From: Paraphysomonas bandaiensis
Taxonomy: Eukaryota > Protista > Chrysophyceae
DNA: 13,304 bases
Direction: 5' to 3'
NCBI GenBank assembly: GCA_965644295.1
Contig: CBFFRP010000055.1
Coordinates: forward strand, 1-13,304
Part shown: piece by piece, positions 1 to 13,231 of the stretch
Numbering within the stretch: position 1 is the first letter of the stretch
Layout: the number at the start of each line of letters is the position of its first letter
Made by a program: the position numbers and the translations under genes
The notes under the pieces: model-generated
Seen by the model: only the letters and a program-made list of their open reading frames with translations
The model's database searches: none
What the model was told of the DNA's origin: nothing

Positions 1-224
1 ACAACTACAGCATTGGGCAGTCGGGGGGTTTACAGGCATATCATCATTTTGACTTATACAGAGACAATTTTGACGTTGCTGCCTGCATGCAGAATTAATT
101 GATTGCTAGGAAACTGTTTTCATTATGTAGTATGTATTAACACTAATTACGTGGAGTGATTTGAATTAGGAAACTAATGTAATAACTTGAAGTATATATG
201 ATACCAACTCGGTGGCGTTCTATT

Positions 225-719
225 CTACAAAATGAAAAATCTGCTATTTACAAATCCAGCTGAATTGTCAATCACGCGTAGACACTTAATGTTCATAAAA
301 TATTTCAAGAAAATATATGTTATTATGAATGTTTTGTTCTGCACGAAACTAATAAAATCACTACAAAAAAGTGATTGATCCAAAAAAGTGAGCTTGTGAT
401 ATCCTTGGGGTGATGATTTCAACATCAAAAACTCCGTTTCTGGAGATGGTGTCATGAGAAAATGATCCACTGGATTATACGTCACAGGAATCTCGAGATT
501 CTCCAAGGCCTCTTGAACCAACGGCAAAATATCGTCGTCAAACGTGAGGCGTGATGCACTGCCTAGAATCTGTCGTGTCACTGGTGTTGCATAGCTTGTC
601 TCAGATTGCTTTCCATGCGACTTGGACAAGTAATAAGATGGTGGCCCACCATCTTGTGAGATTTCAACTCGCCCACCAAAAGTAACATTTACTTTTATTG
701 ACTCGACTTCTTCATCCAT
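225..719 (-). CDS. Hypothetical protein, probably part of a spliced gene
   Basis: 164-aa ORF with protein-like composition in the first ~110 aa and no recognisable motif. A possible upstream exon 881-813 (MVPEQRKGKRKSPRLPEKQQSVQ) ends at a good donor CAG|GTACGA at 812, but its in-frame acceptor is ambiguous. The AT-rich 3' third may be intronic. Confidence 0.4.
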   Translation of the reverse strand: MDEEVESIKVNVTFGGRVEISQDGGPPSYYLSKSHGKQSETSYATPVTRQILGSASRLTFDDDILPLVQEALENLEIPVTYNPVDHFLMTPSPETEFLMLKSSPQGYHKLTFLDQSLFCSDFISFVQNKTFIITYIFLKYFMNIKCLRVIDNSAGFVNSRFFIL

Positions 720-1011
720 GCACTGGTCGACTGATTTCTTTCGTTTTTTGCTATTAGAGTCGTTTTTTGTGTGAATTGGTCATGAATATGAGAGATATGT
801 GTTATTTCGTACCTGGACAGATTGCTGCTTCTCTGGCAATCTAGGGCTCTTTCTCTTTCCTTTTCTCTGCTCTGGTACCATTACACTACTCAGGATAATG
901 CATTGGTGGCATTATTTTCCCATTGACTCCTATATGACACCTGTGGTAGCCTGTTAATGGAGTTATGTTGGGTCATTCTGAGTGTTGTGAGAAGAAAATC
1001 AAATCACTACT

Positions 1012-1027
1012 AAAAAAAAAAAAAAAA
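1012..1027. promoter_or_regulatory. Poly(dA:dT) tract (A16) in the divergent intergenic region
   Basis: The A16 run is seen directly, with further A runs nearby, between two head-to-head genes. A nucleosome-excluding promoter role is inferred from general eukaryotic knowledge. Confidence 0.35.
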
Positions 1028-1256
1028 GTGAACTGCAAAAAAACATCAGCGCTCCTTCGTTGAAAAAGACCATATATCACACACGTTCTTATTATTATTG
1101 CCACAAAAAATAAAAAGTACTGTACGATCGCAGATGGCAGGTGTCAAAAGTGGCTCAAGCTTGAACTGAACGCAAAAATAGCCCAAAACATACCCAATCT
1201 GTTAAACATAACGCCTGTACAGTAGGTAGTTTAAGCAAACTACATTAAGCAGGATA

Positions 1257-1960
1257 ATGGATAACTATCCATTGTTCAGTTATCTCTTCTCTTCCCCCTT
1301 GGTTCAAAGAAACGAAGAGCGTGGATATTCGGAAGTGGATTTCCTGGACTATCCCACAGAGCGAAGAGCTCTGAAGTCTATTATGGAAAAGAAAGCTGGT
1401 ATTCACATTCGTTGGAAAAGTGAAGTAGCCAATATAAATAATTTTCTGAATGCCTATTCCAACAGCAAGATATTGCACTTTACAGGCCACGGAGAAAACG
1501 GTTTCATTCGCTTTCAGTCATACTATTTTCACACTTCTTGATGTTGTAGGTGTGGTTGCATTTGAAAATGAGTATGGCGTATTAGATTTCGTATCTCAGG
1601 AACAGCTCTCGGAAATGTTGCGTGCGGGTCATATTCAGAAGCCAGAATGCGTGTTCCTGTCTGCCTGTTATGCACAGACTGTTGCTGACGCATTTGTGAA
1701 TGTTGGCGTCCAACATGTCATTACGGTAATTAATGACCGTATACTAGACAAGGTACGATGTACTCCCATAAGTTACCACATAATGTATATGCTTGTATTC
1801 AGGCCTCTTTGGACTTTACAGATTCATTTTATTCTGCGTTGCTCGGAGGCAAATCTGTTTCTGAATCTTTCAACTTAGGAATAGCTAGATTGGTGGCTCA
1901 ACACCCAACAGAAAGCGTGAAGTTTGAATTAAAAGGTCACGGAAATCACGACGAACCGAT
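1257..1960 (+). other. CHAT (caspase/separase-clan CD peptidase) domain
   Basis: ILHFTGHG (His codon 1488-1490), AFENEYG, VFLSAC (Cys codon 1666-1668), AFVNVGVQHVI and FTDSFYSALLGGKSVSESF follow the CHAT motif order with an intact His-Cys dyad. Boundaries are approximate. Confidence 0.85.
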
Positions 1961-3689
1961 ATTTCCTTTTACTGACCATTCCATTACCAATGCATTAATC
2001 GACATTACCCCTTCGTTACCTACTTCTCAGTGTCATTCCCCTGCAATGTTTTCTATTGGCCGCCAATGTGAAGTGCACCAAGTTAGTGCTGCACATTATC
2101 TATATGACATGTAACGTCTGTGTAGGTGTACAATCTTCTCATCAACGATATGAAACTGGTCAATATTACTGGTCAAAAGGGTATTGGAAAAACAGAAGTT
2201 GCACTTAGAGTTGCAGAATATTCTCGTGAAAGATACTCTTTCTCGCGGCTCTTATTTTTAGAGTTAAGCAATGCTGGGGACTGTTCCGAAATTGCTTGCC
2301 TTGAAAAACTTGTCGCATCGTTTTGCACAAATACGTCAGAATCAATATCGTCATTGATTTGTCGCAATGACATCGAAGCAGTCGTTGAATATATTCGTGG
2401 GTCCATTGCACAAGATGAAAAGGTCTTGTTATTAATGGATGGAATAGACGCGTGGATTAAAAAGAAAAGAGATTTTCTGCTCGCTTTAGTTTCTAGAATG
2501 CGGCAACGACTTGGGGAATCTGTTTGGATAGTCTTGACCTCCCAGAAAAATGTGAGTGCTATATGCTGCATGGTAACCAAATATTTAAGCCTAAGTATAC
2601 CAGATTGATATGGACGCATGTCGTGAAGTTGTAATCAATTCATTGAGTGACATTCACACTGCTAAGCTTTTTTGCATGCGTGCTCCAAGAAATCTTGACA
2701 GAGACGAGCTTACACTGGAGGTTGATTTGACAATTAATGGTTATTCCTTTCACTCACAAAATATTCACAGGCGAATGAATCTCATAGTGACCCTATCCAG
2801 GCATTTTCGAAGACAAAACTGTTGCATTCTATGAAGGTTTGAATCGATCGGTGTTATATTGCTAAATTTCTTGCAGGGAAATCCGAGGGTGGTTGAATTG
2901 GTAGCGAAGGAACTACAGTTTGATGGTCATGCTCAAAATATTCTACGGTACGAAACATATTTCAGGGAAGAAGTCATCCGAAACATTATGCATCAGGTCT
3001 TAGACTATGTATATAGTTATGGCTATATAACGGACATATCAGATTTTATGTGACCAGGATGTGCCTAGTTGGCAAGATGTATGTGTGAGGATACGTAATA
3101 CGTACCGAAGATATGTTGGAATAGAAACTTCGCGTGCACGCCCTTTGACTGTTACTGACTTTGAATTTTTTGCATCTTGTTCCGCATGGGGATCTGATCC
3201 GCAGTTAGTTCCGGCGTCCAACGGATATGCAATTCAGAATGGTGCATATGAGTCATTCATGACGTGGTTTGAAAGCGTTTCACTGTGCTTGAAACATAGC
3301 TGTTTGTGGAATCGACCTCATTGTATATTTGGGTTCATCAACAGGACGCAAGCAGCTAAAAAACTTCAAAATTGTGATATTGTATGTGTTATTCAGCTCT
3401 TGTTTTCGTTTATAACCTAAACTTATAGGGGACATTTCTAATTGGTGTATCTCAGTCGGAGCCCTGTTTGGTTATAAATGTTGTTACTTCAACTAAAAAA
3501 GTGTTGTCTGTGAAAGTTCAGTTTGATATCAATTCTCCGACACCATTTAGCTATCGTGTCAATCACGATAAGGTCAACAGTTTCATGACATTAGAGGACT
3601 TGCTGATTTCGAATCCACAGCTGCGATATTTTTTTCCTGCTATTGGTGAAGGGTTGATTGAAAAGTTGACATTACTTCCTCAGACATAG
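1257..3689 (+). CDS. CHAT protease - STAND (NB-ARC-like) NTPase - STAT-type SH2 protein; 9 exons, 684 aa
   Basis: Exons 1257-1500, 1550-1752, 1803-2081, 2126-2551, 2604-2720, 2771-2836, 2877-2996, 3043-3381, 3429-3689 (2055 nt). Eight GT-AG introns of 49, 50, 44, 52, 50, 40, 46 and 47 nt join the ORF-track fragments into one stop-free frame. Motifs are restored across junctions: HFTGHGENG/VVAFENEYG, GRQCEVHQ/VYNLL, LHSMK/GNPRVV, LQNCDI/GTFLI. Confidence 0.88.
2050..2910 (+). other. STAND/NB-ARC-like P-loop NTPase domain
   Basis: IGR..E pre-motif, Walker A LVNITGQKGIGKTEVA (G at 2171), Walker B LLLMDGID, sensor strand IVLTSQ, INSLS...AKLF and the GxP motif GNP. Boundaries are approximate. Confidence 0.85.
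3061..3689 (+). other. STAT-type linker plus SH2 domain
   Basis: W..V (start), RPLT..DFEFF, F..WF, LWN...IFGFINRTQAAKKL...GTFLIGVSQSE and F.TLEDLL match the STAT linker-SH2 pattern (RPL..D, F..WF, W..G.I.GFI.K/R..A..LL...GTFLLRFSES). Recognised by eye, no HMM run. Confidence 0.72.
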
Positions 3690-4016
3690 TGCAGAAACAC
3701 GGTATTGAAATTCGTTATAGTGGTTATAAGCCATTTAGATAGTAAAGTTTATGTGGTGCGTAACCATGGTGTTTAACTTCATCAGCTTTGTATTCAGTGA
3801 GAATTTCACGATATCCCAGAAGCAAGTATACTATTTAATTGAGAATCGATATTTCTCAGTTATGATATAGTTGTTACTATTATCTGTAAAGTATTCTTCA
3901 CGTTATGATTAATTTGTTTCTTATTTAACATAGAGAGTGGTAACTTTCGACGAATTAACATACATCAGTAGCTGAATTTACTTCCTTGTAACTATATTCC
4001 CTCTTGCATACTATGT

Positions 4017-4288: not shown

Positions 4289-4293
4289 TACGG
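4289..4293. repeat. Left 5-bp target-site duplication (TACGG) of the Copia element
   Basis: TACGG immediately precedes TGTTGAG at 4294 and recurs at 8904-8908 immediately after CTTGACA. Confidence 0.9.
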
Positions 4294-4509
4294 TGTTGAG
4301 TTCTGCTATATGAGAGCAATTGAAAGCTGTAGTTATAAGGTATTTAAATTACTGTATTATACAGTTGTAGTCTTGTTAATCGTATTGTGAGAATGAATGA
4401 CGATAAGCATATAGCGGTAAAACGGAATATTGTGACGATGCAAGTTGTAGTGACGATGTAAGATCGTCGTACGAGAAATGAGTGGTAGTGGAGACAACAT
4501 GATATTGAT
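4294..4509 (+). repeat. 5' LTR, truncated at its 3' end
   Basis: 216 bp identical to 8585-8800 except one mismatch (A4478 vs T8769). The last 103 bp of the LTR are missing. Confidence 0.93.
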
Positions 4510-4529
4510 TAGGGTTAGGGTTAGGGTTA
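4509..4529 (+). repeat. Interstitial telomeric-type repeat (TTAGGG)3TTA at a deletion junction
   Basis: TTAGGGTTAGGGTTAGGGTTA lies exactly where LTR identity stops and the integrase-tail sequence (HVSIHVLFDES) starts. It is absent from the 3' LTR. Confidence 0.85.
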
Positions 4530-5832
4530 CATGTGTCAATACATGTGTTATTCGACGAGAGCATTCCCCCCAGAGAGAAGGAGTACTTCGAGGAGCTGGA
4601 GGCTGCGTTAGTTAAACATGATCCCCAGGCTCGACAGGTTGAAGAGTTCAACCATTTGATTGGATCTTACCATACCGATGAGGGTTTCCTGTTTAGGACT
4701 ACGAGAGTCGTGGTTCGGAAAGGTTTGATCGTGGCTTATAGAGCCTTAGTAACTGCTGGTAGAGAGCAGTTGGAGGAGAAGACTCCGATACATATAGCTG
4801 ATGTAGTGAAACTAACACAGTCGTATAATTTGCGCAGGTGGCACGAAAATTCTGCGACCCGTGACGATGGGGCAGGTGGTGAGGAGGAGCGATCGATGCC
4901 GGCTGGGGGTGGGACACCCAAACAGTCTACGGCAGATGACTCATCAGGGAGTGAGCAGACTCCATGTGCCTTACCCGAGAGAAGCGTGAGCACTTCGTCT
5001 AGAGAGACAAGTGTGTGTGTCCCTAGTAGTCAAACTGCTAACCCGCCGGCTGCTATAAGCAAGAGGGTACGAACCCAAAGAGTGATGACCAACGTGTCTA
5101 CTCTGGGTGAAATCAACTTCCTGTGTGGGGAAGATGCGTTAATATGTGTAAGGCAAGTGATGACTTTTTGATTACTGACCCGTCTGATTATAGGGAGCCT
5201 GAGTCGTACGAAGAGTCTCTTCAGTGTAGTGATGCAGACAAATGGAAGGAGGCGCGCAGATTAGAACGGAATGCACTTTTTCAGCGTGAAGTGTTTGAAG
5301 TAGTAGAAACTCCGCCTGATGCTCGACCTCTTAAATCTCGTTACGTATATAAGCGAAAGTACAATAAGGATGGCTCCATCAAGAAGCATAAAGCACGACT
5401 TGTAGCACTTGGGTACGGTCAACGATCTGGCGTAGATGTGGAGAACACATTTGCCCCTGTAGTCAAGAGTATCTCTGTTCGGTTGATTCTGGCGTTGGCT
5501 CTTGTGTTCAGTATGTTTGTGCATCAACTCGATGTATCCAGTGCGTTCTGTTATGCCGATACTGAAGGCGACGTTTACATGAATCCTACTCCAGATTTTC
5601 AACTTCCACCTGGACATTGTTTTAAATTGAAAAAATCTCTATATGGGCTCCGTAGTTCTCCACGATCATGGTGGAAAACCATAAACAAGTTCATCAAATC
5701 CTTGGGATTTCGACCGTGTGTGTTAGAACCTTGCTTGTATCATGCTGTATATAAAGGTCATAAAGTGTATCTCACCATATTATATGTGGATGACATCGTC
5801 ATCGCATGTGCTGACCTTAATATTATTACAGA
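4530..5832 (+). pseudogene. pol: Copia pol, 5' segment: integrase C-terminal tail/linker and first part of reverse transcriptase
   Basis: SIHVLFDE resembles the SRDVxFDE motif at the end of Copia integrase. RT motifs: EPESYEE..W, KARLVALGY.Q..GVD...TFAPV, HQLDVSSAF, LKKSLYGLRSSPRSW, EPCLY, YVDD. Frameshift near 5145-5149. Confidence 0.93.
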
Positions 5833-7436
5833 TTTTCTCTGCCCTACGATGGCAAATACAGTCCAACATAAAGTTTCACCCTATTAACCAGCTCCAAGCC
5901 CAATGTCTCTATTGAGACCGTGGCTGAGTCACATCAGTGTGCCCAGGGCCTTTTACACTCCCTTACTGCTGCATTTTGTTGACCACCACGCTTCCGACAA
6001 ATTACCTGTCACACCATGTTGTACACGCTCCAAGCCCCCCTGCCTGGCCTTGCAACCTTCACCCTACTCAACTACTTCAGTTAAACCACGTGCCTGCACC
6101 AATGCAGCGCTGACCGCACCTATGTGCTATCCCCTCAGCAGACAACTTCGTCTCACCCATCGCTTTCTACGGCTACAACCTCTCAGAACATGGCTCGGAC
6201 CCCCTATGCAATCACTGAATACTCTCGATCCCTCTCAACTGTGCAACAGGGCTGCCTTCTGCCGCCCACTCAACCCAACCCAACATGGTTTGTCTGTGGT
6301 CCATCCACCCAGCAGGCTACCCCCTCACCCTGTTCACCTATCACCCCCCAAAGCACATCCATCTCATTGGATAGACACTGTATTCCGCATACGGTATACT
6401 CGACTACTGTACTACTGTGTCCTACAGGATGTATACCATTCCGTGTATACCTCTACTGCTGTTGGACACATCACCATGTCCATGTACCTGTCTACCTGTA
6501 CTGTTGGACACATCACCAGCTCTCTCTCACTGTCCAACACACTCATATTATCACTGCACTGTCATACACACACACAGTACACTCTACCTCCTCCTAGAAA
6601 ACCCCCGGACAAACTATCTCCTCTCCCTTCGTCTCTGATACCTTGCCGTCATCTTCCTTACACACACTCTCTATGCCTCAGTCTGTACCCCCCTGCACTG
6701 ACACAGACACTAACAAGGGCAGCTGAGGACGTCCGAGTGTCTCCTCCAGACCATCATCATCATCACGATCATCTCGTGCATAGGTCTATCAGAGTACTCG
6801 ACCTCAGTGACTCTTGTTCTGTTGCGCAGTCTCACTCTCCTCAATCAGATGTTGCCTCTCTTGCACCATCACACTCCCTCTCGACTCCCTGTAGCTGGAC
6901 ACACCGGATGACCCTCACATCCCACCCCTGTACAGCTATACACCCTCTTGCATGTGTTCTCTACGCTTCTTCACAGTAGGCCATAACCTCTTGCAAGACC
7001 TTCATCCACATACCTCCGAGCCACTTGAAACAATGCCTAAAGGAAGGCCACCAGATCGCCAATCTCAGAAGGGCATATTACTGTTTCCCCTAACTGCCAT
7101 AAGGCTAATAAGTCAGTCCCCGTGAGGTACATAAGGCTATCTATCATATAGCGAGTGGAGTCTCATCCCAAGAGGAGACCTCCAGATCACACGCGCCGGT
7201 GAGTCCCAGGACACACGATCATGGCGAGCCTCATAACACACACTAAGAACGGAAGTGGTTGCACCTTGGTGCTTGCGGCGACGCACAAGCAGCTTCTGTA
7301 GCGTTAAATAGTAGGATAAAAGAGTTTGTATTGATTAGTTACGGGTAGTAGTCTAACTAGTATGACTAGCATTCTTCTAGCCACTAATTGGTGCAGGCTT
7401 TCAACGCCTATTGCTAAATAATCAGACATTCAATAT
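5833..7436 (+). mobile_element. Unclassified non-autonomous insertion, copy B (1.6 kb), nested in the Copia RT
   Basis: Flanked by the 13-bp direct repeat ATATTATTACAGA (5820-5832 and 7437-7449). Removing the insert and one repeat restores RT in frame: ADLNIITEIKARFCERFDMTDMG. C-rich plus strand, no terminal inverted repeats or LTRs seen, no recognisable enzyme domain. Strand inferred from the PPD-ending frame. Confidence 0.88.
6459..6518 (+). repeat. Internal tandem duplication with 42-bp period
   Basis: CTGTTGGACACATCACCA at 6459-6476 and 6501-6518. Confidence 0.8.
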
Positions 7437-7449
7437 ATATTATTACAGA

Positions 7450-8441
7450 AATAAAAGCTAGATTCTGCGAACGATTCGACATGACGGATATGGGAGCCGT
7501 TGAACATTTCCTCAATGTTCGTGTCACGCGAGGACAGGATTTCATTCAGCTGAATCAGCAGACATATGCGGAGAAAATTCTCCTCAAATTCACTGATTTC
7601 CTCGGTCCCTCATCAAAAATTCGAAAGTCGCCGCTACCCCTCGATGCAATGGACAGAATTAATCAAGTAGACAGTGATCTCACACCTGAGGAGAAAGAGG
7701 GATAGATAATTATCCTTATCGCAGCCTACTGGGTGCCATGTTATATCTATCTATGAATACTCGCCCTGATATTGCATATGCAGTTGTGGTTTGTTATCTA
7801 GATAATATGCATCTAAGCCTACCCGGGCTACATGTTATTTAATGACGTACCTATTGCAGTACGTTAGGGGTACAGTTCGAAAGGGCATTCGGTTCAGTAG
7901 TAAGCACTTCGACATGCACATCTTTACTGATGCAGACTGGGCTGGCGATGTGGTGTCACGCCGATCTACGACTGGATACATAGTATTTGCCGCCGGTGGA
8001 CCACTTATCTGGCAGTCCATTTTACAGGCTACCGTTTCAACGTCATCAATGCAAAGTGAGTATCAGGCTATGTATGCTGGCATGCAAGAACTGGTATGGC
8101 TTCGGGGGGTGTTGGACGAATTGGGACTTCGTCTACGCGAACCCACACCATTTTTCTTGGATAGCCAGAGTGCTCGTGACTTAGCATTGAATCCGGTGTT
8201 CCATAAGCGCTCAAAACACATCGAGATCAAATACCATTGGGTTAGGGAACACGTAGATCCAGATGGCCTCTTTAACACTGCCATAATGTACCACGTTGGA
8301 ACTGATGATCAGACAGCAGACATATTCACGAAATCGTTGTGTGGTGTAACTTTCGAGAAACACAGGAAGAGATGCTTTGGAGAGGATCGAAAATCATCTG
8401 TTGAGGTTATTAGAGAAAAGTCGTTCAAACGACGTAAGTGA
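7450..8441 (+). pseudogene. pol: Copia pol, 3' segment: RT C-terminus and RNase H
   Basis: FDMTDMG...FL, LNQQTY, YPYRSLLGAMLYLSMNTRPDIAYAV (read in a shifted frame), FTDADWAGD..SRRSTTGY, SSMQSEY, DSQSA..LA.NPVFHKRSKHIEIKYHWVRE, QTADIFTKSL. Lesions near 7700, 7786 and 7803. Confidence 0.95.
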
Positions 8442-8575
8442 TCAGTTGACTGTGCTGTGAGACTAGCTGAAATGTCGGAGTCATACGTCCACCTGTTTGT
8501 CCTGTTTGGTTTCGGTGGTTGCGTATCCGTCAGTTATGTCTTGTGATGTGAAGAGTCTATCTACAGCTTTGAATT

Positions 8576-8584
8576 GAGAGGGAG
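8576..8584 (+). other. Polypurine tract
   Basis: GAGAGGGAG directly abuts the TG of the 3' LTR. Confidence 0.85.
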
Positions 8585-8903
8585 TGTTGAGTTCTGCTAT
8601 ATGAGAGCAATTGAAAGCTGTAGTTATAAGGTATTTAAATTACTGTATTATACAGTTGTAGTCTTGTTAATCGTATTGTGAGAATGAATGACGATAAGCA
8701 TATAGCGGTAAAACGGAATATTGTGACGATGCAAGTTGTAGTGACGATGTAAGATCGTCGTACGAGAATTGAGTGGTAGTGGAGACAACATGATATTGAT
8801 GAATGATAAGAGATATTGATTATAATTTATAATTCTCAGCATTGAGTATAAGTTACCTTCTGTTGTTAAGTTAATACTTCTCATATTATGTCAAACCTTG
8901 ACA
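8585..8903 (+). repeat. 3' LTR, complete (319 bp)
   Basis: Starts TGTTGAG after the PPT, ends CTTGACA and is followed by the TSD TACGG. Confidence 0.92.
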
Positions 8904-10453: not shown

Positions 10454-13231
10454 TCATATCGTTATTGCAGTAATATAGTTATCAATATTATTATGATGAT
10501 GTAAAAAAACGTGTAGAAGGGTGTTATAAAAGCCCACGGCTTTACAATGGATGTGATCTCCAAAAATCGTCTCTAGTTGTGCAGTGGTGATGGTACCTGT
10601 CCAGTATCTTTCCACCTGTGGCACGGAAGGATTCCAGGCCCGGTTGGAGAGTCTCTTTAGCACATTGGTGGTCCAATGGGGTAAAACCGAATTTCTCAGT
10701 ACCTCTTGAAGCGCGTTTTTGTGGTTGTGAAATGCCGATTCCCTTATTTGAGTGATGGCGTCATATGTGCAGTCTAGGCACATGTGCTTGAGGGAGTCCA
10801 ATCTAAAGCCGCGGTCAGAACAGACGGCTTTGGTCAGGTCTAGTCCGTGTTTAGTTTTAGCCCGGTTTCGACCTATACTGAAGGATTTGTCCCATGTCAC
10901 TCGTTGGCGTAGGTGGGAGCTATCTTTTTCCTTTGTTGAACCACCACCTGCTTGCACCAGTTTGCGCGGGAGTAGTGCTCCACTGTCTGTCCAGTATCTG
11001 GGTGCCCTGTCGGGATTGTGACCGTAGTGTTGATCTCTGTATGCAGTGTAGAACTCCAGCGTCCGTTGTCTGCGGAGGGACTAGAAGTCTGTTAGCAGGG
11101 GGCTCGTACGAAATGGCCGTCGTTCCCCCGAAATGCGCCAGTGCCATAAGCCCGCGGTGAGTATTCGCTCGATGGCTTGGTCTACTTATATGTTACAAAC
11201 AGTGTTGTTTTGTCTTCCCAGTAGACGATCAACCTCAAGCCAGTCTTCTCCAGCTATTGCGTCTGCAAGGTATATACCTTTGTCTTCATATGTCCATTCA
11301 GATTCGTCGGTGGTGCGTCTTTCCGGGTGTGATCGAACCCATGCTACTTTCCTAGTGCAATCTGTGATTGCTGCAATGCTTTCGAGCAGGACTCCCTTGG
11401 CACGATGGCCTAGGGCTCGTCGTCTGGTGGAAAGTGCCTCTTCCGTGCGCGGATGCAAACGGCTTTACAGTCTGTGTTAATCGGCACATGTGCATGGATC
11501 CGCGCCGATAGTATAAGTGCCATTGCAGCGCCCATAAGCTCGTACGCATACGGTCCAAGTCCAGGTACATCGCTGAAAGGTGTCTCTAAGCGCAGGATTT
11601 TTGTAGTGCCGGTCTGCCATTCGTCCTCCGGGGTTAGCCAGACAACCGCCGCTCCTCCATGATGTGCCCATCTTAGACGTGAGGGCACATGGGTGATGCG
11701 GCGCGGGGAGATGGCTGCAGGCGTGTATGATCCGTCTGTAAAGATTGCTTGGTAGGTATCAGAGTCGGCATCATCAAGTTGTAATGTGCGTATGATGTTG
11801 GTCATAGTGTGGGCATCTTCAGGTTCAGGGGGTAGAGGTCGTTGGAGTGTGATGCCGACCTCAGCACCCCATTCCCTTAAACTTAAGGCAAAGTGGTGGT
11901 AGTCTGGGTGCGGAGCAATTGTCTGTGTAAGGAGGAAATGCGCTGCGTCACCTGCATCCCCTCCGAGTGTTAGAGCACGTTGTAGGGAGCCCCATTTTTG
12001 TTCTTGAGCAGAGTCTGAGAAGCGTTTCATTCCTAGTTCATTATGCTTGAGGGATAGATAGATCAATTCCGTAGGGTATCCAGGACCTAGGCTTAGCGCT
12101 TTCCTGTAGAGATGTGCGCAGGTGGAGTCAATGTCCTTGTACCATTGTAGAGGCCAAGAGGCTTTGGTAGCCTTGTACAGTAGTGTGGGTATGATTTGGG
12201 TTTCGATAACCATGACTTTTTTGCAACCAGTTGAGGCCTGCTTGATTCCGAAGTGGGTGCCTGCTGCCTTCAGGTATTGTGTACACACCAGTTATATAGG
12301 AGTCCATGTCGGTGGGTGTCAGGGGTAGATCAGCTCCCAGATAGTGTATCGACGCATAAGTCGTTTGAATTGGTACAGCTTGAGGTTTCCATTGCCAGTC
12401 ATATAAGGTGATGTGATTGGGGTGTTTAGCCAGAGGGAGCGGTTCCTGTAGTCTCGGGAACTCAGTGCAAATTACTTTGGGCACAGAGAGTTCCGTACCC
12501 GAGAAGGTGCAGAACACTGACATTCGTACCGCCGTGTCCTGTGCTTGAGTGACAGATGCATTGATTGTGGTGATGTCATCCGCGAAAGAGACTTTTTTCT
12601 CAGAGGTTGGGGTCTGGGTGAGCAGTGGTGCTGGTGTGAGACAGATTGCTCTAAGATCTATGTCAAGCCATGTGAGAAGTATATCGTGTAGCGCTACCCA
12701 GGCACATGTGGATTCAGTGCCTCCTTGTGTTATACCTCTTGCGGCCTCAAAACCTAGGACGAAGTGGGCAATGAAGTGTCCGTCAGCAGCTAAAAGTTCT
12801 GCCAGAGAACGTGGTTCAATGTTATTCGCCATGAACGGAGTCCATGGGAATGTGAGACCACCGGCGTCTAAATTGCTAAACCATTCAACCACCGCCTTGG
12901 GAACCCCTAGTCTTGCCCATGCTAGTTTCATGAGGTTGGGTGTAATGGAATCGAAGGCGTTTTTGAAGTCCCAGAGTGTACATATGTGTTGTGCATCGTT
13001 CCGTCTGGCTGACTGGGAGGCTGCAAGTACCCGTAAGATGGCCGTATCAGTACCATTTCTCCATCGATATCCATGTTGGGATGGGTGTAGAACCTTCTGT
13101 TCCTCCCAGACTGTGAGTATCCTGTGGGAGATTTTCCGCGTTAGGATTTTCCGCGATATTTCCAGCAGTCCAATTGGTCTAAGGTTGGAGAGTGAGGGTT
13201 CTCCTGGTTTCTTATTGATATCCCTCCTAAT
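10454..13231 (-). mobile_element. Degenerate non-LTR (LINE-like) retrotransposon: RT - RNase H - CCHC-like zinc finger
   Basis: Manual translation from 13231: LRPIGLLEISRKI, HPSQHGYR..GT, WDFKNAFDSI, RGITQGG, SFADD, HYLG (non-LTR RT). RNase H: FTDGS, AYELMG, NTDC, WVRSH...GIYLADAIA. Zinc knuckle: CSDRGFRLDSLKHMCLDC, with the second Cys changed to Arg. Frameshifts near 12290 and 11450, plus in-frame stops at 11186 and ~11082. Confidence 0.9.

What the first reader, a model, noticed from the sequence alone, without database searches (positions are those of the whole stretch)
1257..3689. NLR-like protein with a caspase-like CHAT effector, STAND NTPase switch and STAT-type SH2 in the sensor position
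Seen: eight short introns fuse the apparently separate ORFs into one intact 684-aa protein with an intact CHAT His/Cys dyad, Walker A/B and GxP motifs, and a linker-SH2 C-terminus. Established: STAND proteins are usually effector-NTPase-repeat sensor (LRR/TPR/WD40/ankyrin), and CHAT-STAND-TPR proteins occur in bacterial and fungal defence or cell-death systems; the linker-SH2 unit is known from STATs, Dictyostelium STAT/SHK proteins and plant SHA/SHB. Inference: no repeat domain is present here, so SH2 may be the sensor, coupling a peptide or phosphorylation signal to oligomerisation and proteolysis. This is a candidate protist innate-immunity or death module. I do not know of a characterised protein with this architecture but cannot exclude database homologs.
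Basis: partly seen in the sequence, partly recalled or inferred. Interest (0 to 1): 0.85.

Follow-up and report, generated by a model that had tools for sequence, protein, structure and literature searches.

The report
Caspase-like NLR protein ending in STAT-type SH2
The window holds an intact nine-exon protist gene that joins a caspase-like protease, an NLR-type ATP switch and a STAT-type SH2 module; it belongs to an uncharacterised family found in oomycetes, brown algae and uncultured relatives, and its own branch has lost the SH2 arginine that normally binds phosphotyrosine.

Summary
Eight GT-AG introns of 40-52 nt join nine exons (1257-3689, + strand) into one 684-aa protein. Relatives support seven of the eight junctions, either by sharing the intron or by reading straight across it.

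The architecture is confirmed:
- CHAT protease with His78/Cys121.
- NACHT/NB-ARC-like P-loop domain with Walker A, Walker B and a GxP helical domain.
- STAT-type linker plus SH2. The family profile hits STAT6 at 1e-17, and Foldseek's top 39 hits are all STATs.
- No repeat sensor.

The architecture is not unique. One copy per genome occurs across oomycetes (Saprolegnia SDRG_08366, Phytophthora, Aphanomyces), and homologs occur in brown algae. All carry automatic names only, and I found no paper that describes them.

The window gene belongs to a sister clade known only from environmental assemblies. All seven genes of that clade whose SH2 could be read have Gly in place of the phosphotyrosine-binding Arg (FLIGVS, not FLLRFS), yet they keep the protease dyad and evolve under purifying selection. 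No winged-helix domain was seen.

Most likely it is a nucleotide-switched, oligomerisation-activated protease regulated by a non-canonical SH2. A role as a pathogen receptor is not supported. It is a new variant of a known kind.

The parts
1257..3689 (+). Whole gene: ATG at 1257, TAG at 3687-3689, nine exons, 684 aa
   Evidence: Rebuilt. Collinear full-length BLASTP matches to oomycete proteins.
1257..1500 (+). Exon 1 (residues 1-81 plus the first base of Gly82). CHAT N-terminal part with catalytic His78 (1488-1490) followed by Gly79.
   Evidence: Pfam CHAT weak on this piece alone (12.3 bits). The motif LHFTGHG aligns with LHFSGHG of the family and LHFIGHG of PDB 8tl0. The same exon end occurs in L008/L013.
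1501..1549 (+). Intron 1, 49 nt, GT..AG
   Evidence: Position shared with L008/L013.
1550..1752 (+). Exon 2. CHAT core with catalytic Cys121 (1666-1668) in VFLSACYA.
1753..1802 (+). Intron 2, 50 nt
   Evidence: An intron lies at the same place, after NDRILDK, in L004, L007, L008 and L013.
1803..2081 (+). Exon 3. C-terminal part of the CHAT domain and the connector to the NTPase.
2082..2125 (+). Intron 3, 44 nt
   Evidence: P0008 and the oomycete proteins read VHQVY across this junction without a gap. The intron is shared with L001, L008 and L012.
2126..2551 (+). Exon 4. P-loop nucleotide-binding domain with Walker A GQKGIGKT (2171-2194) and Walker B VLLLMDGID (2423-2449, NACHT-like DGxD).
   Evidence: Pfam NACHT 31.2 bits, above the 26.7 cut-off, plus AAA_16, AAA_22 and NB-ARC. 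The family profile hits plant and animal NLRs in the PDB.
2552..2603 (+). Intron 4, 52 nt
   Evidence: L009/L010, L011/P0002 and P0003 read across it without an intron.
2604..2720 (+). Exon 5. End of the nucleotide-binding domain and start of helical domain 1.
2721..2770 (+). Intron 5, 50 nt
   Evidence: P0002/L011 reads DELCLD..AFSKSKLL continuously.
2771..2836 (+). Exon 6. Helical domain 1.
2837..2876 (+). Intron 6, 40 nt
   Evidence: Position shared with L001, L010, L012 and L013.
2877..2996 (+). Exon 7. Helical domain 1 with the GxP motif GNP (2877-2885).
   Evidence: Aligns with GHPR of the family. Falls in the helical region of the AF2 model of a relative.
2997..3042 (+). Intron 7, 46 nt. 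An alternative in-frame acceptor at 3057/3058 was rejected.
   Evidence: L001 reads LHQVLYVQDPLTWQD with no intron, matching MHQ|ILCDQDVPSWQD.
3043..3309 (+). Exon 8, first part. STAT-type helical linker domain (residues 486-574).
   Evidence: The family profile matches linker plus SH2 of STAT6 (residues 320-508) at E 1e-17. Foldseek gives STATs over 230-250 of 255 columns.
3310..3381 (+). Exon 8, last part. Start of the SH2 (helix alphaA, FGFINRTQAAKKL) with Arg586 (3343-3345) at position alphaA2.
3382..3428 (+). Intron 8, 47 nt. It splits the SH2 domain.
   Evidence: The same position is used in L004, L007, L010, L012 and L013.
3429..3689 (+). Exon 9. SH2 strands betaB onward (GTFLIGVSQSE) with Gly604 (3444-3446) where SH2 domains carry the phosphotyrosine-binding Arg. 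Stop at 3687-3689.
   Evidence: Strand assignment comes from the model of P0047.
4293..8800 (+). Neighbour, not part of the gene. An LTR retrotransposon with identical 217-nt LTRs (4293-4509, 8584-8800) and a copia-type reverse transcriptase (5123-5887).

Best explanation
The locus is an intact, intron-rich gene of an unidentified protist. The protist is probably a stramenopile or a relative. The gene encodes a compact 684-aa member of a family built as CHAT (caspase-like cysteine protease), then a NACHT/NB-ARC-like P-loop NTPase with helical domain 1, then a STAT-type linker and SH2. The proposed mechanism is inferred, not shown. The NTPase acts as a nucleotide-dependent switch. Its oligomerisation brings the fused CHAT domains together and turns them on, much as the apoptosome does for caspase-9 and as filament formation does for bacterial SAVED-CHAT. 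The linker-SH2 module sits where other STAND proteins carry TPR, LRR or WD40 repeats, so it would be the regulatory, ligand-binding or autoinhibitory part. In the oomycete and brown-alga clade the SH2 keeps the phosphotyrosine pocket (Lys alphaA2, Arg betaB5, Ser betaB7) and could read a phosphotyrosine signal. In the window's clade betaB5 is always Gly and alphaA2 always Arg. The module there most likely binds a partner, or the protein's own NTPase, in a non-canonical and probably phosphotyrosine-independent way. Given one conserved copy per oomycete genome, the output is more likely regulated proteolysis in signalling, development or cell death than recognition of varied pathogens.
For: Gene model and junctions. 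One polypeptide in independently annotated genomes: P0013 Saprolegnia (CHAT 40.6 bits, NACHT 28.2, SH2 27.6) and P0019 Phytophthora, with names and sources. CHAT: the family profile hits the solved CHAT protein 8tl0 at E 8e-15 with His and Cys aligned, and the dyad is kept in the window and in all six other window-type genes. NTPase: NACHT above cut-off on exon 4; profile hits to NLRs; an AF2 model with pLDDT 88 whose best folds are Apaf-1, ZAR1 and NRC3/4. Linker-SH2: Pfam SH2 in 17 of 23 C-terminal sequences; STAT6 1e-17, STAT3 1e-14 and Dictyostelium STATa 5e-11, against 3e-5 or worse for any non-STAT SH2; an AF2 model with pLDDT 93 whose top 39 Foldseek hits are all STATs. Gly at betaB5 in 7 of 7 window-type genes against Arg in all oomycete-type genes. 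Purifying selection in the window clade: pN 0.15 against pS 0.84 between L013 and L008/L010, and 0.09 against 0.86 for the SH2 exon. Single copy per oomycete genome, with a gene tree that follows the species tree. The nearest non-family kin are prokaryotic CHAT-NB-ARC-TPR proteins, one of them in an archaeal-looking gene neighbourhood, which supports a swap of the sensor module.
Against: No step of the mechanism has been observed; there are no expression, activity or oligomerisation data. No winged-helix domain, which in STAND proteins holds the ADP-bound off state, was seen after helical domain 1 in the model of a relative. In the window only about 35 residues separate the GxP helix from the linker, so the switch may work differently or not at all. 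I could not fold the window protein itself, because the tools take only uninterrupted references; the folds come from relatives about 30% identical. One clade member (L007) has Asn for the Walker B Asp, and the Ascophyllum homolog lacks the dyad, so not all members need every activity. The organism is unknown.
Confidence: 0.55

Rival explanations
1. It is an innate-immunity receptor of the NLR kind, in which the SH2 senses a pathogen-derived or infection-induced peptide or phosphorylation signal and triggers proteolytic cell death.
For: The effector-NOD-C-terminal binding module layout is that of NLRs, and its best structural kin are Apaf-1 and plant resistosomes. The nearest non-family kin are prokaryotic CHAT-NB-ARC-TPR proteins of the conflict-system type. 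One environmental contig carries two tandem copies, one of which is decaying.
Against: There is one copy per oomycete genome, and same-species database entries are alternative models of one locus. The tree follows the species tree with about 50% identity between Saprolegniales and Peronosporales. The C-terminal module is well conserved rather than hypervariable. The window clade lacks the phosphotyrosine Arg.
Confidence: 0.2
2. The SH2 of the window clade still reads phosphotyrosine, or another phospho-ligand, through a rebuilt pocket that uses the invariant Arg at alphaA2 and Ser at betaB7. The Gly would make room for this. On that view the protein is a phosphorylation-gated protease like its oomycete kin.
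For: The charge swap is systematic. The window clade has Arg at alphaA2 and Gly at betaB5, whereas the oomycete clade has Lys at alphaA2 and Arg at betaB5. Both patterns are invariant within their clades and under purifying selection.
Against: From established knowledge of SH2 domains, loss of the betaB5 Arg abolishes phosphotyrosine binding in the classic cases, and natural SH2 domains without it are generally non-binders. No structure of a window-type SH2 could be predicted here.
Confidence: 0.15
3. The three regions are separate genes, or the locus is a decayed pseudogene whose open frame after 'splicing' is accidental.
For: There is no transcript evidence. The window carries retrotransposons next door.
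Against: All nine exons are conserved in order in many relatives. Intron positions are shared or are read through by kin. The catalytic and nucleotide-binding motifs are intact. There is no internal stop in 684 codons.
Confidence: 0.02

Closest known systems
Uncharacterised oomycete and brown-alga proteins auto-named 'SH2 domain-containing protein' or 'CHAT domain-containing protein'. Examples: Saprolegnia diclina SDRG_08366 (XP_008612470.1), Aphanomyces invadans H310_01224, Phytophthora cactorum KAG3022702.1, Ectocarpus siliculosus CBN79812.1.
   Same: Same order of CHAT, P-loop NTPase with GxP helical domain, STAT-type linker and SH2. They are collinear with the window protein over its whole length at about 30% identity, and share the same His/Cys dyad and Walker motifs.
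   Different: They are 720-990 aa, with a long low-complexity insert between the NTPase and the linker. They have few or no introns. Their SH2 keeps GTFLLRFSET with the betaB5 Arg, whereas the window clade has GTFLIGVSQSE. They form a separate clade in the tree (98/98 against 100/99 support). The Ascophyllum homolog lacks the dyad.
STAT transcription factors (human STAT6, STAT3, STAT5, STAT1; Dictyostelium STATa) and plant STAT-like linker-SH2 proteins
   Same: The linker domain plus SH2 forms one unit, with the FWxWF-like motif, the GF(I/L)SK...GTFLLRFSE core (in the oomycete clade) and the (L/F)YPxxPK motif after the SH2. Profile E-values run from 1e-17 to 5e-11, and Foldseek TM-scores are 0.5-0.6 over about 240 columns.
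   Different: There is no coiled-coil domain, no DNA-binding domain and no C-terminal tail tyrosine; the protein ends about 10 residues after the SH2. The module is fused to a protease and an NTPase. In the window clade the betaB5 Arg is Gly.
Apaf-1 / CED-4 / DARK apoptosomes and plant NB-ARC resistosomes (ZAR1, NRC)
   Same: These are the best structural matches of the nucleotide-binding plus helical domain (Apaf-1 3sfz at 2.7e-7, ZAR1 6j5t, NRC3). The logic would be the same: an NTP switch that activates a caspase-type protease by bringing copies into proximity.
   Different: Here the protease is fused rather than recruited through CARD. No winged-helix domain, helical domain 2 or WD40/LRR sensor was detected. 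The Walker B is of the NACHT DGxD type.
Prokaryotic CHAT-NB-ARC-TPR proteins (P0078-P0081 from metagenomes; P0078 lies in an archaeal-looking neighbourhood)
   Same: These are the next-best hits after the family: 31-34% identity over CHAT plus NTPase, in the same domain order.
   Different: Their C-terminus is TPR repeats, the classic sensor, instead of linker-SH2. They are prokaryotic.
Bacterial SAVED-CHAT (PDB 8tl0, a type III CRISPR accessory protease)
   Same: This is the only solved structure that the CHAT profile finds (E 8e-15), with the His and Cys motifs aligned. It is described as part of a cyclic-oligoadenylate-triggered proteolytic cascade (bioRxiv 10.1101/2023.06.23.546230, listed).
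   Different: Its activation module is a SAVED nucleotide sensor, not a P-loop NTPase plus SH2.

Membership tests
CHAT / clan CD caspase-like cysteine peptidase (Pfam PF12770) | Significant match to the CHAT profile | tested here: met
   Window exons alone are weak (exon 1: 12.3 bits against a cut-off of 24), because introns cut the domain into three. Collinear kin pass (P0011 56.6, P0017 45.4, P0013 40.6 bits). The family profile that includes the window exons hits the solved CHAT protein 8tl0 at 8e-15.
CHAT / clan CD caspase-like cysteine peptidase (Pfam PF12770) | Catalytic His (followed by Gly) and Cys | tested here: met
   His78-Gly79 in LHFTGHG and Cys121 in VFLSACYA align with the dyad motifs of the family and of 8tl0.
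CHAT / clan CD caspase-like cysteine peptidase (Pfam PF12770) | Peptidase activity | not testable with these tools
   Needs a biochemical assay.
STAND NTPase (NACHT / NB-ARC) | P-loop domain with Walker A and Walker B of STAND type | tested here: met
   Exon 4 scores 31.2 bits on NACHT (cut-off 26.7). The motifs are GQKGIGKT and LLLMDGID. Profile hits to ADR2, DARK, NRC and NLRP1.
STAND NTPase (NACHT / NB-ARC) | Helical domain 1 with GxP motif | tested here: met
   GNP at residues 446-448 aligns with the family's GHPR. A helical bundle follows the alpha/beta core in the AF2 model of P0013:235-520.
STAND NTPase (NACHT / NB-ARC) | Winged-helix domain after helical domain 1 | tested here: not met
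   The AF2 model of a relative shows only helices after the core and then disorder. In the window about 35 residues lie between the GxP helix and the STAT-type linker. The window protein itself was not folded, so this result is provisional.
STAND NTPase (NACHT / NB-ARC) | C-terminal repeat sensor (LRR, TPR, WD40, ankyrin) | tested here: not met
   No repeat family appears on any exon or on any family member. The C-terminus is linker-SH2.
STAND NTPase (NACHT / NB-ARC) | Nucleotide-dependent oligomerisation | not testable with these tools
   Needs purified protein.
STAT-type linker-SH2 module | SH2 fold | tested here: met
   Pfam SH2 is found in 17 of 23 family C-termini. The AF2 model has pLDDT 93 and the alpha-beta-beta-beta-alpha order. 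The window C-terminus aligns to these at E 2e-19. The window SH2 itself is split by intron 8, so it could only be tested through the alignment.
STAT-type linker-SH2 module | Helical linker domain contiguous with the SH2 and matching STATs better than other SH2 proteins | tested here: met
   STAT6 residues 320-508 match at 1e-17, against Grb10 at 3e-5 as the best non-STAT. Foldseek ranks 1-39 are all STATs, over 230-250 columns.
STAT-type linker-SH2 module | Phosphotyrosine-binding Arg at betaB5 (FLVR/FLLR motif) | tested here: not met
   Gly604 in the window (GGT at 3444-3446). Gly is also found in L004, L007, L010, L012 (both copies) and L013. Arg is found in all oomycete-type and brown-alga members.
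STAT transcription factor | Coiled-coil domain, DNA-binding domain and tail tyrosine | tested here: not met
   The N-terminal 485 residues are CHAT plus NTPase. The protein ends shortly after the SH2. It is not a STAT.
NLR-type immune receptor (functional class) | Lineage-specific expansion or a diversifying sensor domain | tested here: inconclusive
   Single copy in oomycetes. The C-terminus is conserved. One tandem pair occurs in L012, where one copy has a premature stop. The copy number in the window's own genome is unknown.

The most novel reading that the evidence does not exclude
A whole clade of uncultured protists uses a STAT-type SH2 that has given up phosphotyrosine recognition (Gly at betaB5, Arg at alphaA2) as the ligand sensor or lock of a fused caspase-like NLR. 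The family as a whole would have arisen when a prokaryotic CHAT-NB-ARC-TPR protein swapped its TPR sensor for the ancestral STAT linker-SH2 unit. That would be a direct link between SH2 signalling and apoptosome-like protease activation outside animals.
Probability: 0.25. Interest if true: 0.8.

Novelty: new variant of a known kind. Interest (0 to 1): 0.6.

Why it matters
STAND/NLR proteins are normally read as effector, switch and repeat sensor. SH2 domains are normally read as phosphotyrosine readers of animal-type signalling. This family puts a STAT-type SH2 in the sensor position of a caspase-like NLR, in stramenopiles, which are not known to have JAK-STAT signalling and have very few SH2 proteins (four in Phytophthora infestans, PMC3019232).

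It offers a tractable test of two questions: whether phosphotyrosine or SH2-mediated docking can gate a STAND switch, and what the ancestral STAT linker-SH2 unit did before STATs existed. The family also contains a natural experiment. One clade has the canonical phosphotyrosine pocket and the sister clade has lost it, yet both remain under constraint. Because the orthologue is single copy in important plant and animal pathogens (Phytophthora, Aphanomyces, Saprolegnia), its function in regulated proteolysis or cell death is also of practical interest.

Tried and rejected
1. Single-exon searches for the C-terminus found nothing, because intron 8 splits the SH2. This applied to Pfam and PDB phmmer. 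It was resolved by using family alignments.
The window protein itself was therefore not folded, and relatives were used instead.
3. The metagenome locus scan with the NTPase alignment returned only two weak, uninformative loci.
4. Trying to name the organism failed. The copia reverse transcriptase finds only unnamed environmental sequences at 63-70% identity, followed by plant copia elements at about 36%. A text search for the sample accessions found nothing. The window has no rRNA or tRNA.
5. A search with the SH2 region of P0013 for other architectures returned only the same family.
6. The alternative acceptor at 3057/3058 (a 679-aa model) was rejected because L001 reads the five extra residues without an intron.
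7. Literature searches for the architecture or the locus tags found no description. Two SH2-evolution papers that might mention it are not held.
8. The reading 'separate genes' was rejected on the collinear homologs.
9. The reading 'the Gly is a private degenerative mutation' was rejected because seven genes share it under purifying selection.
Full report
**Observation**

The stretch 1257-3689 contains eight staggered ORFs in different frames. None of the introns is a multiple of three in length. Their GC content is 30-39%, against 41% in the exons.

This is not chance. The spliced protein matches full-length proteins of oomycetes collinearly. For Aphanomyces invadans H310_01224 the matches are residues 6-482 at E 7e-65 and residues 518-668 at E 2e-19.

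Junction support from relatives:
- Introns 1, 2 and 3 sit at the same codons in the environmental relatives L008/L013. Intron 2 is also shared with L004 and L007.
- Introns 3-6 are shared with the closest relative, L001.
- Junctions 4 and 5 are read without any intron by L011/P0002, and junction 4 also by L009/L010.
- Junction 7 is read without an intron by L001. This also settles the acceptor at 3042/3043 rather than the in-frame alternative at 3057/3058.
- Intron 8 is shared with L004, L007, L010, L012 and L013, and is absent in oomycetes.

The start and the stop coincide with the ends of the homologs. The contig is eukaryotic and protist-like. It is not human.

**Domains**

*N-terminus.* The CHAT profile is only weakly visible on single exons. 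It is clear in collinear kin, at 40-57 bits. The family profile, which includes the window exons, finds the solved CHAT protein 8tl0 at E 8e-15 with LHFxGHG and xxxACx aligned. In the window the dyad is His78 (1488-1490) and Cys121 (1666-1668).

*Middle.* Exon 4 passes the NACHT cut-off (31.2 bits). It carries Walker A GQKGIGKT and a NACHT-like Walker B LLLMDGID. The family profile hits NLRs in the PDB. An AF2 model of the corresponding part of P0013 (pLDDT 88) is most like Apaf-1, ZAR1 and NRC3/4. That model shows the alpha/beta core and a helical domain holding the GxP motif (GNP at residues 446-448 in the window), but no winged-helix domain.

*C-terminus.* The family C-termini carry Pfam SH2 in 17 of 23 sequences. 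Their profile hits STAT6 (1e-17), STAT3 (1e-14), STAT5, STAT2, STAT1 and Dictyostelium STATa (5e-11) over both linker and SH2. The best non-STAT SH2 reaches only 3e-5. An AF2 model (pLDDT 93) gives STATs as Foldseek ranks 1-39, over 230-250 of 255 columns.

First, homologs are plentiful. The same architecture is present as one gene per genome in:
- Phytophthora, Peronospora, Pythium, Globisporangium and Lagenidium;
- Saprolegnia, Achlya, Thraustotheca and Aphanomyces;
- the brown algae Ectocarpus, Ascophyllum and Laminaria.

These carry automatic names such as 'SH2 domain-containing protein'. Multiple entries from one species are alternative models of one locus.

Second, the window gene is not an orthologue of these. 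In a tree it falls in a sister clade (support 100/99) made only of environmental sequences. The oomycete clade (98/98) follows the species tree.

Third, every gene of the window clade whose SH2 could be read has G[TVM]F[LI]IGVS, that is Gly at betaB5. These genes are the window, L004, L007, L010, L013 and both copies in L012. All oomycete-type and brown-alga members have GTFLLRFSE with the phosphotyrosine-binding Arg. Conversely, alphaA2 is always Arg in the window clade and Lys in the other.

The change is not decay. The clade keeps the protease dyad. Orthologues L013 and L008/L010 differ at 15% of non-synonymous sites against 84% of synonymous sites, and for the SH2 exon the figures are 9% against 86%.

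**Mechanism**

What is shown:
- It is a single gene.
- The protease dyad is conserved.
- It has a STAND-type P-loop with helical domain 1.
- It has a STAT-type linker-SH2 at the position of the sensor.
- Conservation is clade-specific.

What is inferred is the following. The NTPase acts as a nucleotide switch whose oligomerisation activates the fused CHAT domains by proximity. This follows the precedent of apoptosomes and of the cyclic-oligoadenylate-activated bacterial SAVED-CHAT protease (bioRxiv 10.1101/2023.06.23.546230). The linker-SH2 would be the regulatory module.

In the oomycete clade the regulator could be a phosphotyrosine motif. In the window clade the ligand is probably not phosphotyrosine, or is bound through a rebuilt pocket.

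The nearest non-family kin are prokaryotic CHAT-NB-ARC-TPR proteins. One lies among archaeal-type genes. This suggests the family arose when the TPR sensor was replaced by a linker-SH2 unit.

The conserved single-copy pattern argues for regulated proteolysis in signalling, development or death rather than for a diversifying pathogen receptor. The missing winged-helix domain means the switch may differ from classic STANDs.

**Comparison and novelty**

The protein works like an NLR or apoptosome with a built-in caspase-like effector. It is not a full member of the STAND family as defined, because no winged helix and no repeat sensor were found. It contains a STAT-type module but is not a STAT, because it has no coiled coil, no DNA-binding domain and no tail tyrosine.

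I found no paper that describes the architecture. The P. infestans kinome paper only notes four SH2 proteins in that species (PMC3019232). Two SH2-evolution papers that might mention it are not held.

I rate it a new variant of a known kind. The family is already in the databases but uncharacterised. The window adds a distinct clade with a non-canonical SH2.

**Limits**

- The organism is unknown.
- The window protein itself could not be folded or searched as one piece.
- The folds come from relatives about 30% identical.
- There are no expression or biochemical data.
- No step had to be referred.

Noticed in passing
window 4293-8800: An LTR retrotransposon lies about 600 bp downstream of the gene. 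Its two 217-nt LTRs are 100% identical (4293-4509, 8584-8800), which suggests a recent insertion. It has a copia-type reverse transcriptase at 5123-5887 (RVT_2, E 5e-48) and an ORF at 7842-8441 with the copia RNase H-like ADWAGD motif (motif from my own knowledge; no Pfam hit). At only 4.5 kb with no integrase or protease hit, it looks internally deleted.
   Followed up: partly
window 5900-7000: A C- and T-rich, low-complexity stretch sits inside the retrotransposon (GC skew -0.41 to -0.45). It has a 358-aa Pro/Ser/His/Thr-rich ORF (5903-6979) between the reverse transcriptase and the RNase H-like ORF. It may be a nested insertion or an expanded simple sequence.
   Followed up: no
window 10454-12931, minus strand: Overlapping long ORFs (167, 292 and 267 aa) have only a faint reverse-transcriptase signal (RVT_1, E 0.09). 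This is probably the remnant of a second, non-LTR retroelement. GC is higher here (48-54%) than around the gene (about 40%).
   Followed up: partly
L012 7193-9469 and 10772-13055: A 394-kb environmental contig carries two tandem window-type copies (dS 0.077). Copy a has a stop codon directly after the Walker B motif (DGLDE*). Between the two copies the CHAT exon has dN/dS about 1.0, whereas the NTPase exon has 0.10. Together these suggest a young duplicate that is decaying, or a read error at 9x coverage.
   Followed up: partly
P0077 (Ascophyllum nodosum) and P0233 (Ectocarpus siliculosus): The brown-alga homologs keep the SH2 Arg. The Ascophyllum protein, however, has Asn/Ala in place of the CHAT His/Cys, so it is probably an inactive protease. 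The Ectocarpus model lacks the His region, which may be a mis-annotation.
   Followed up: partly
L007 about 3693-3737: One window-clade member has Asn instead of the Walker B Asp (LLILNGIADG). Its nucleotide hydrolysis, or its nucleotide binding, may be altered.
   Followed up: no
oomycete family proteins, between helical domain 1 and the linker (for example P0019 residues about 560-710): There is a long His/Ser-rich low-complexity insert of 100-250 residues. It is absent from the window protein, which is the most compact member seen at 684 aa.
   Followed up: no
window 1-1250: The upstream region has an A-run (about 1010-1030) and an unexplained 164-aa ORF on the minus strand (225-719) with no family match.
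   Followed up: no
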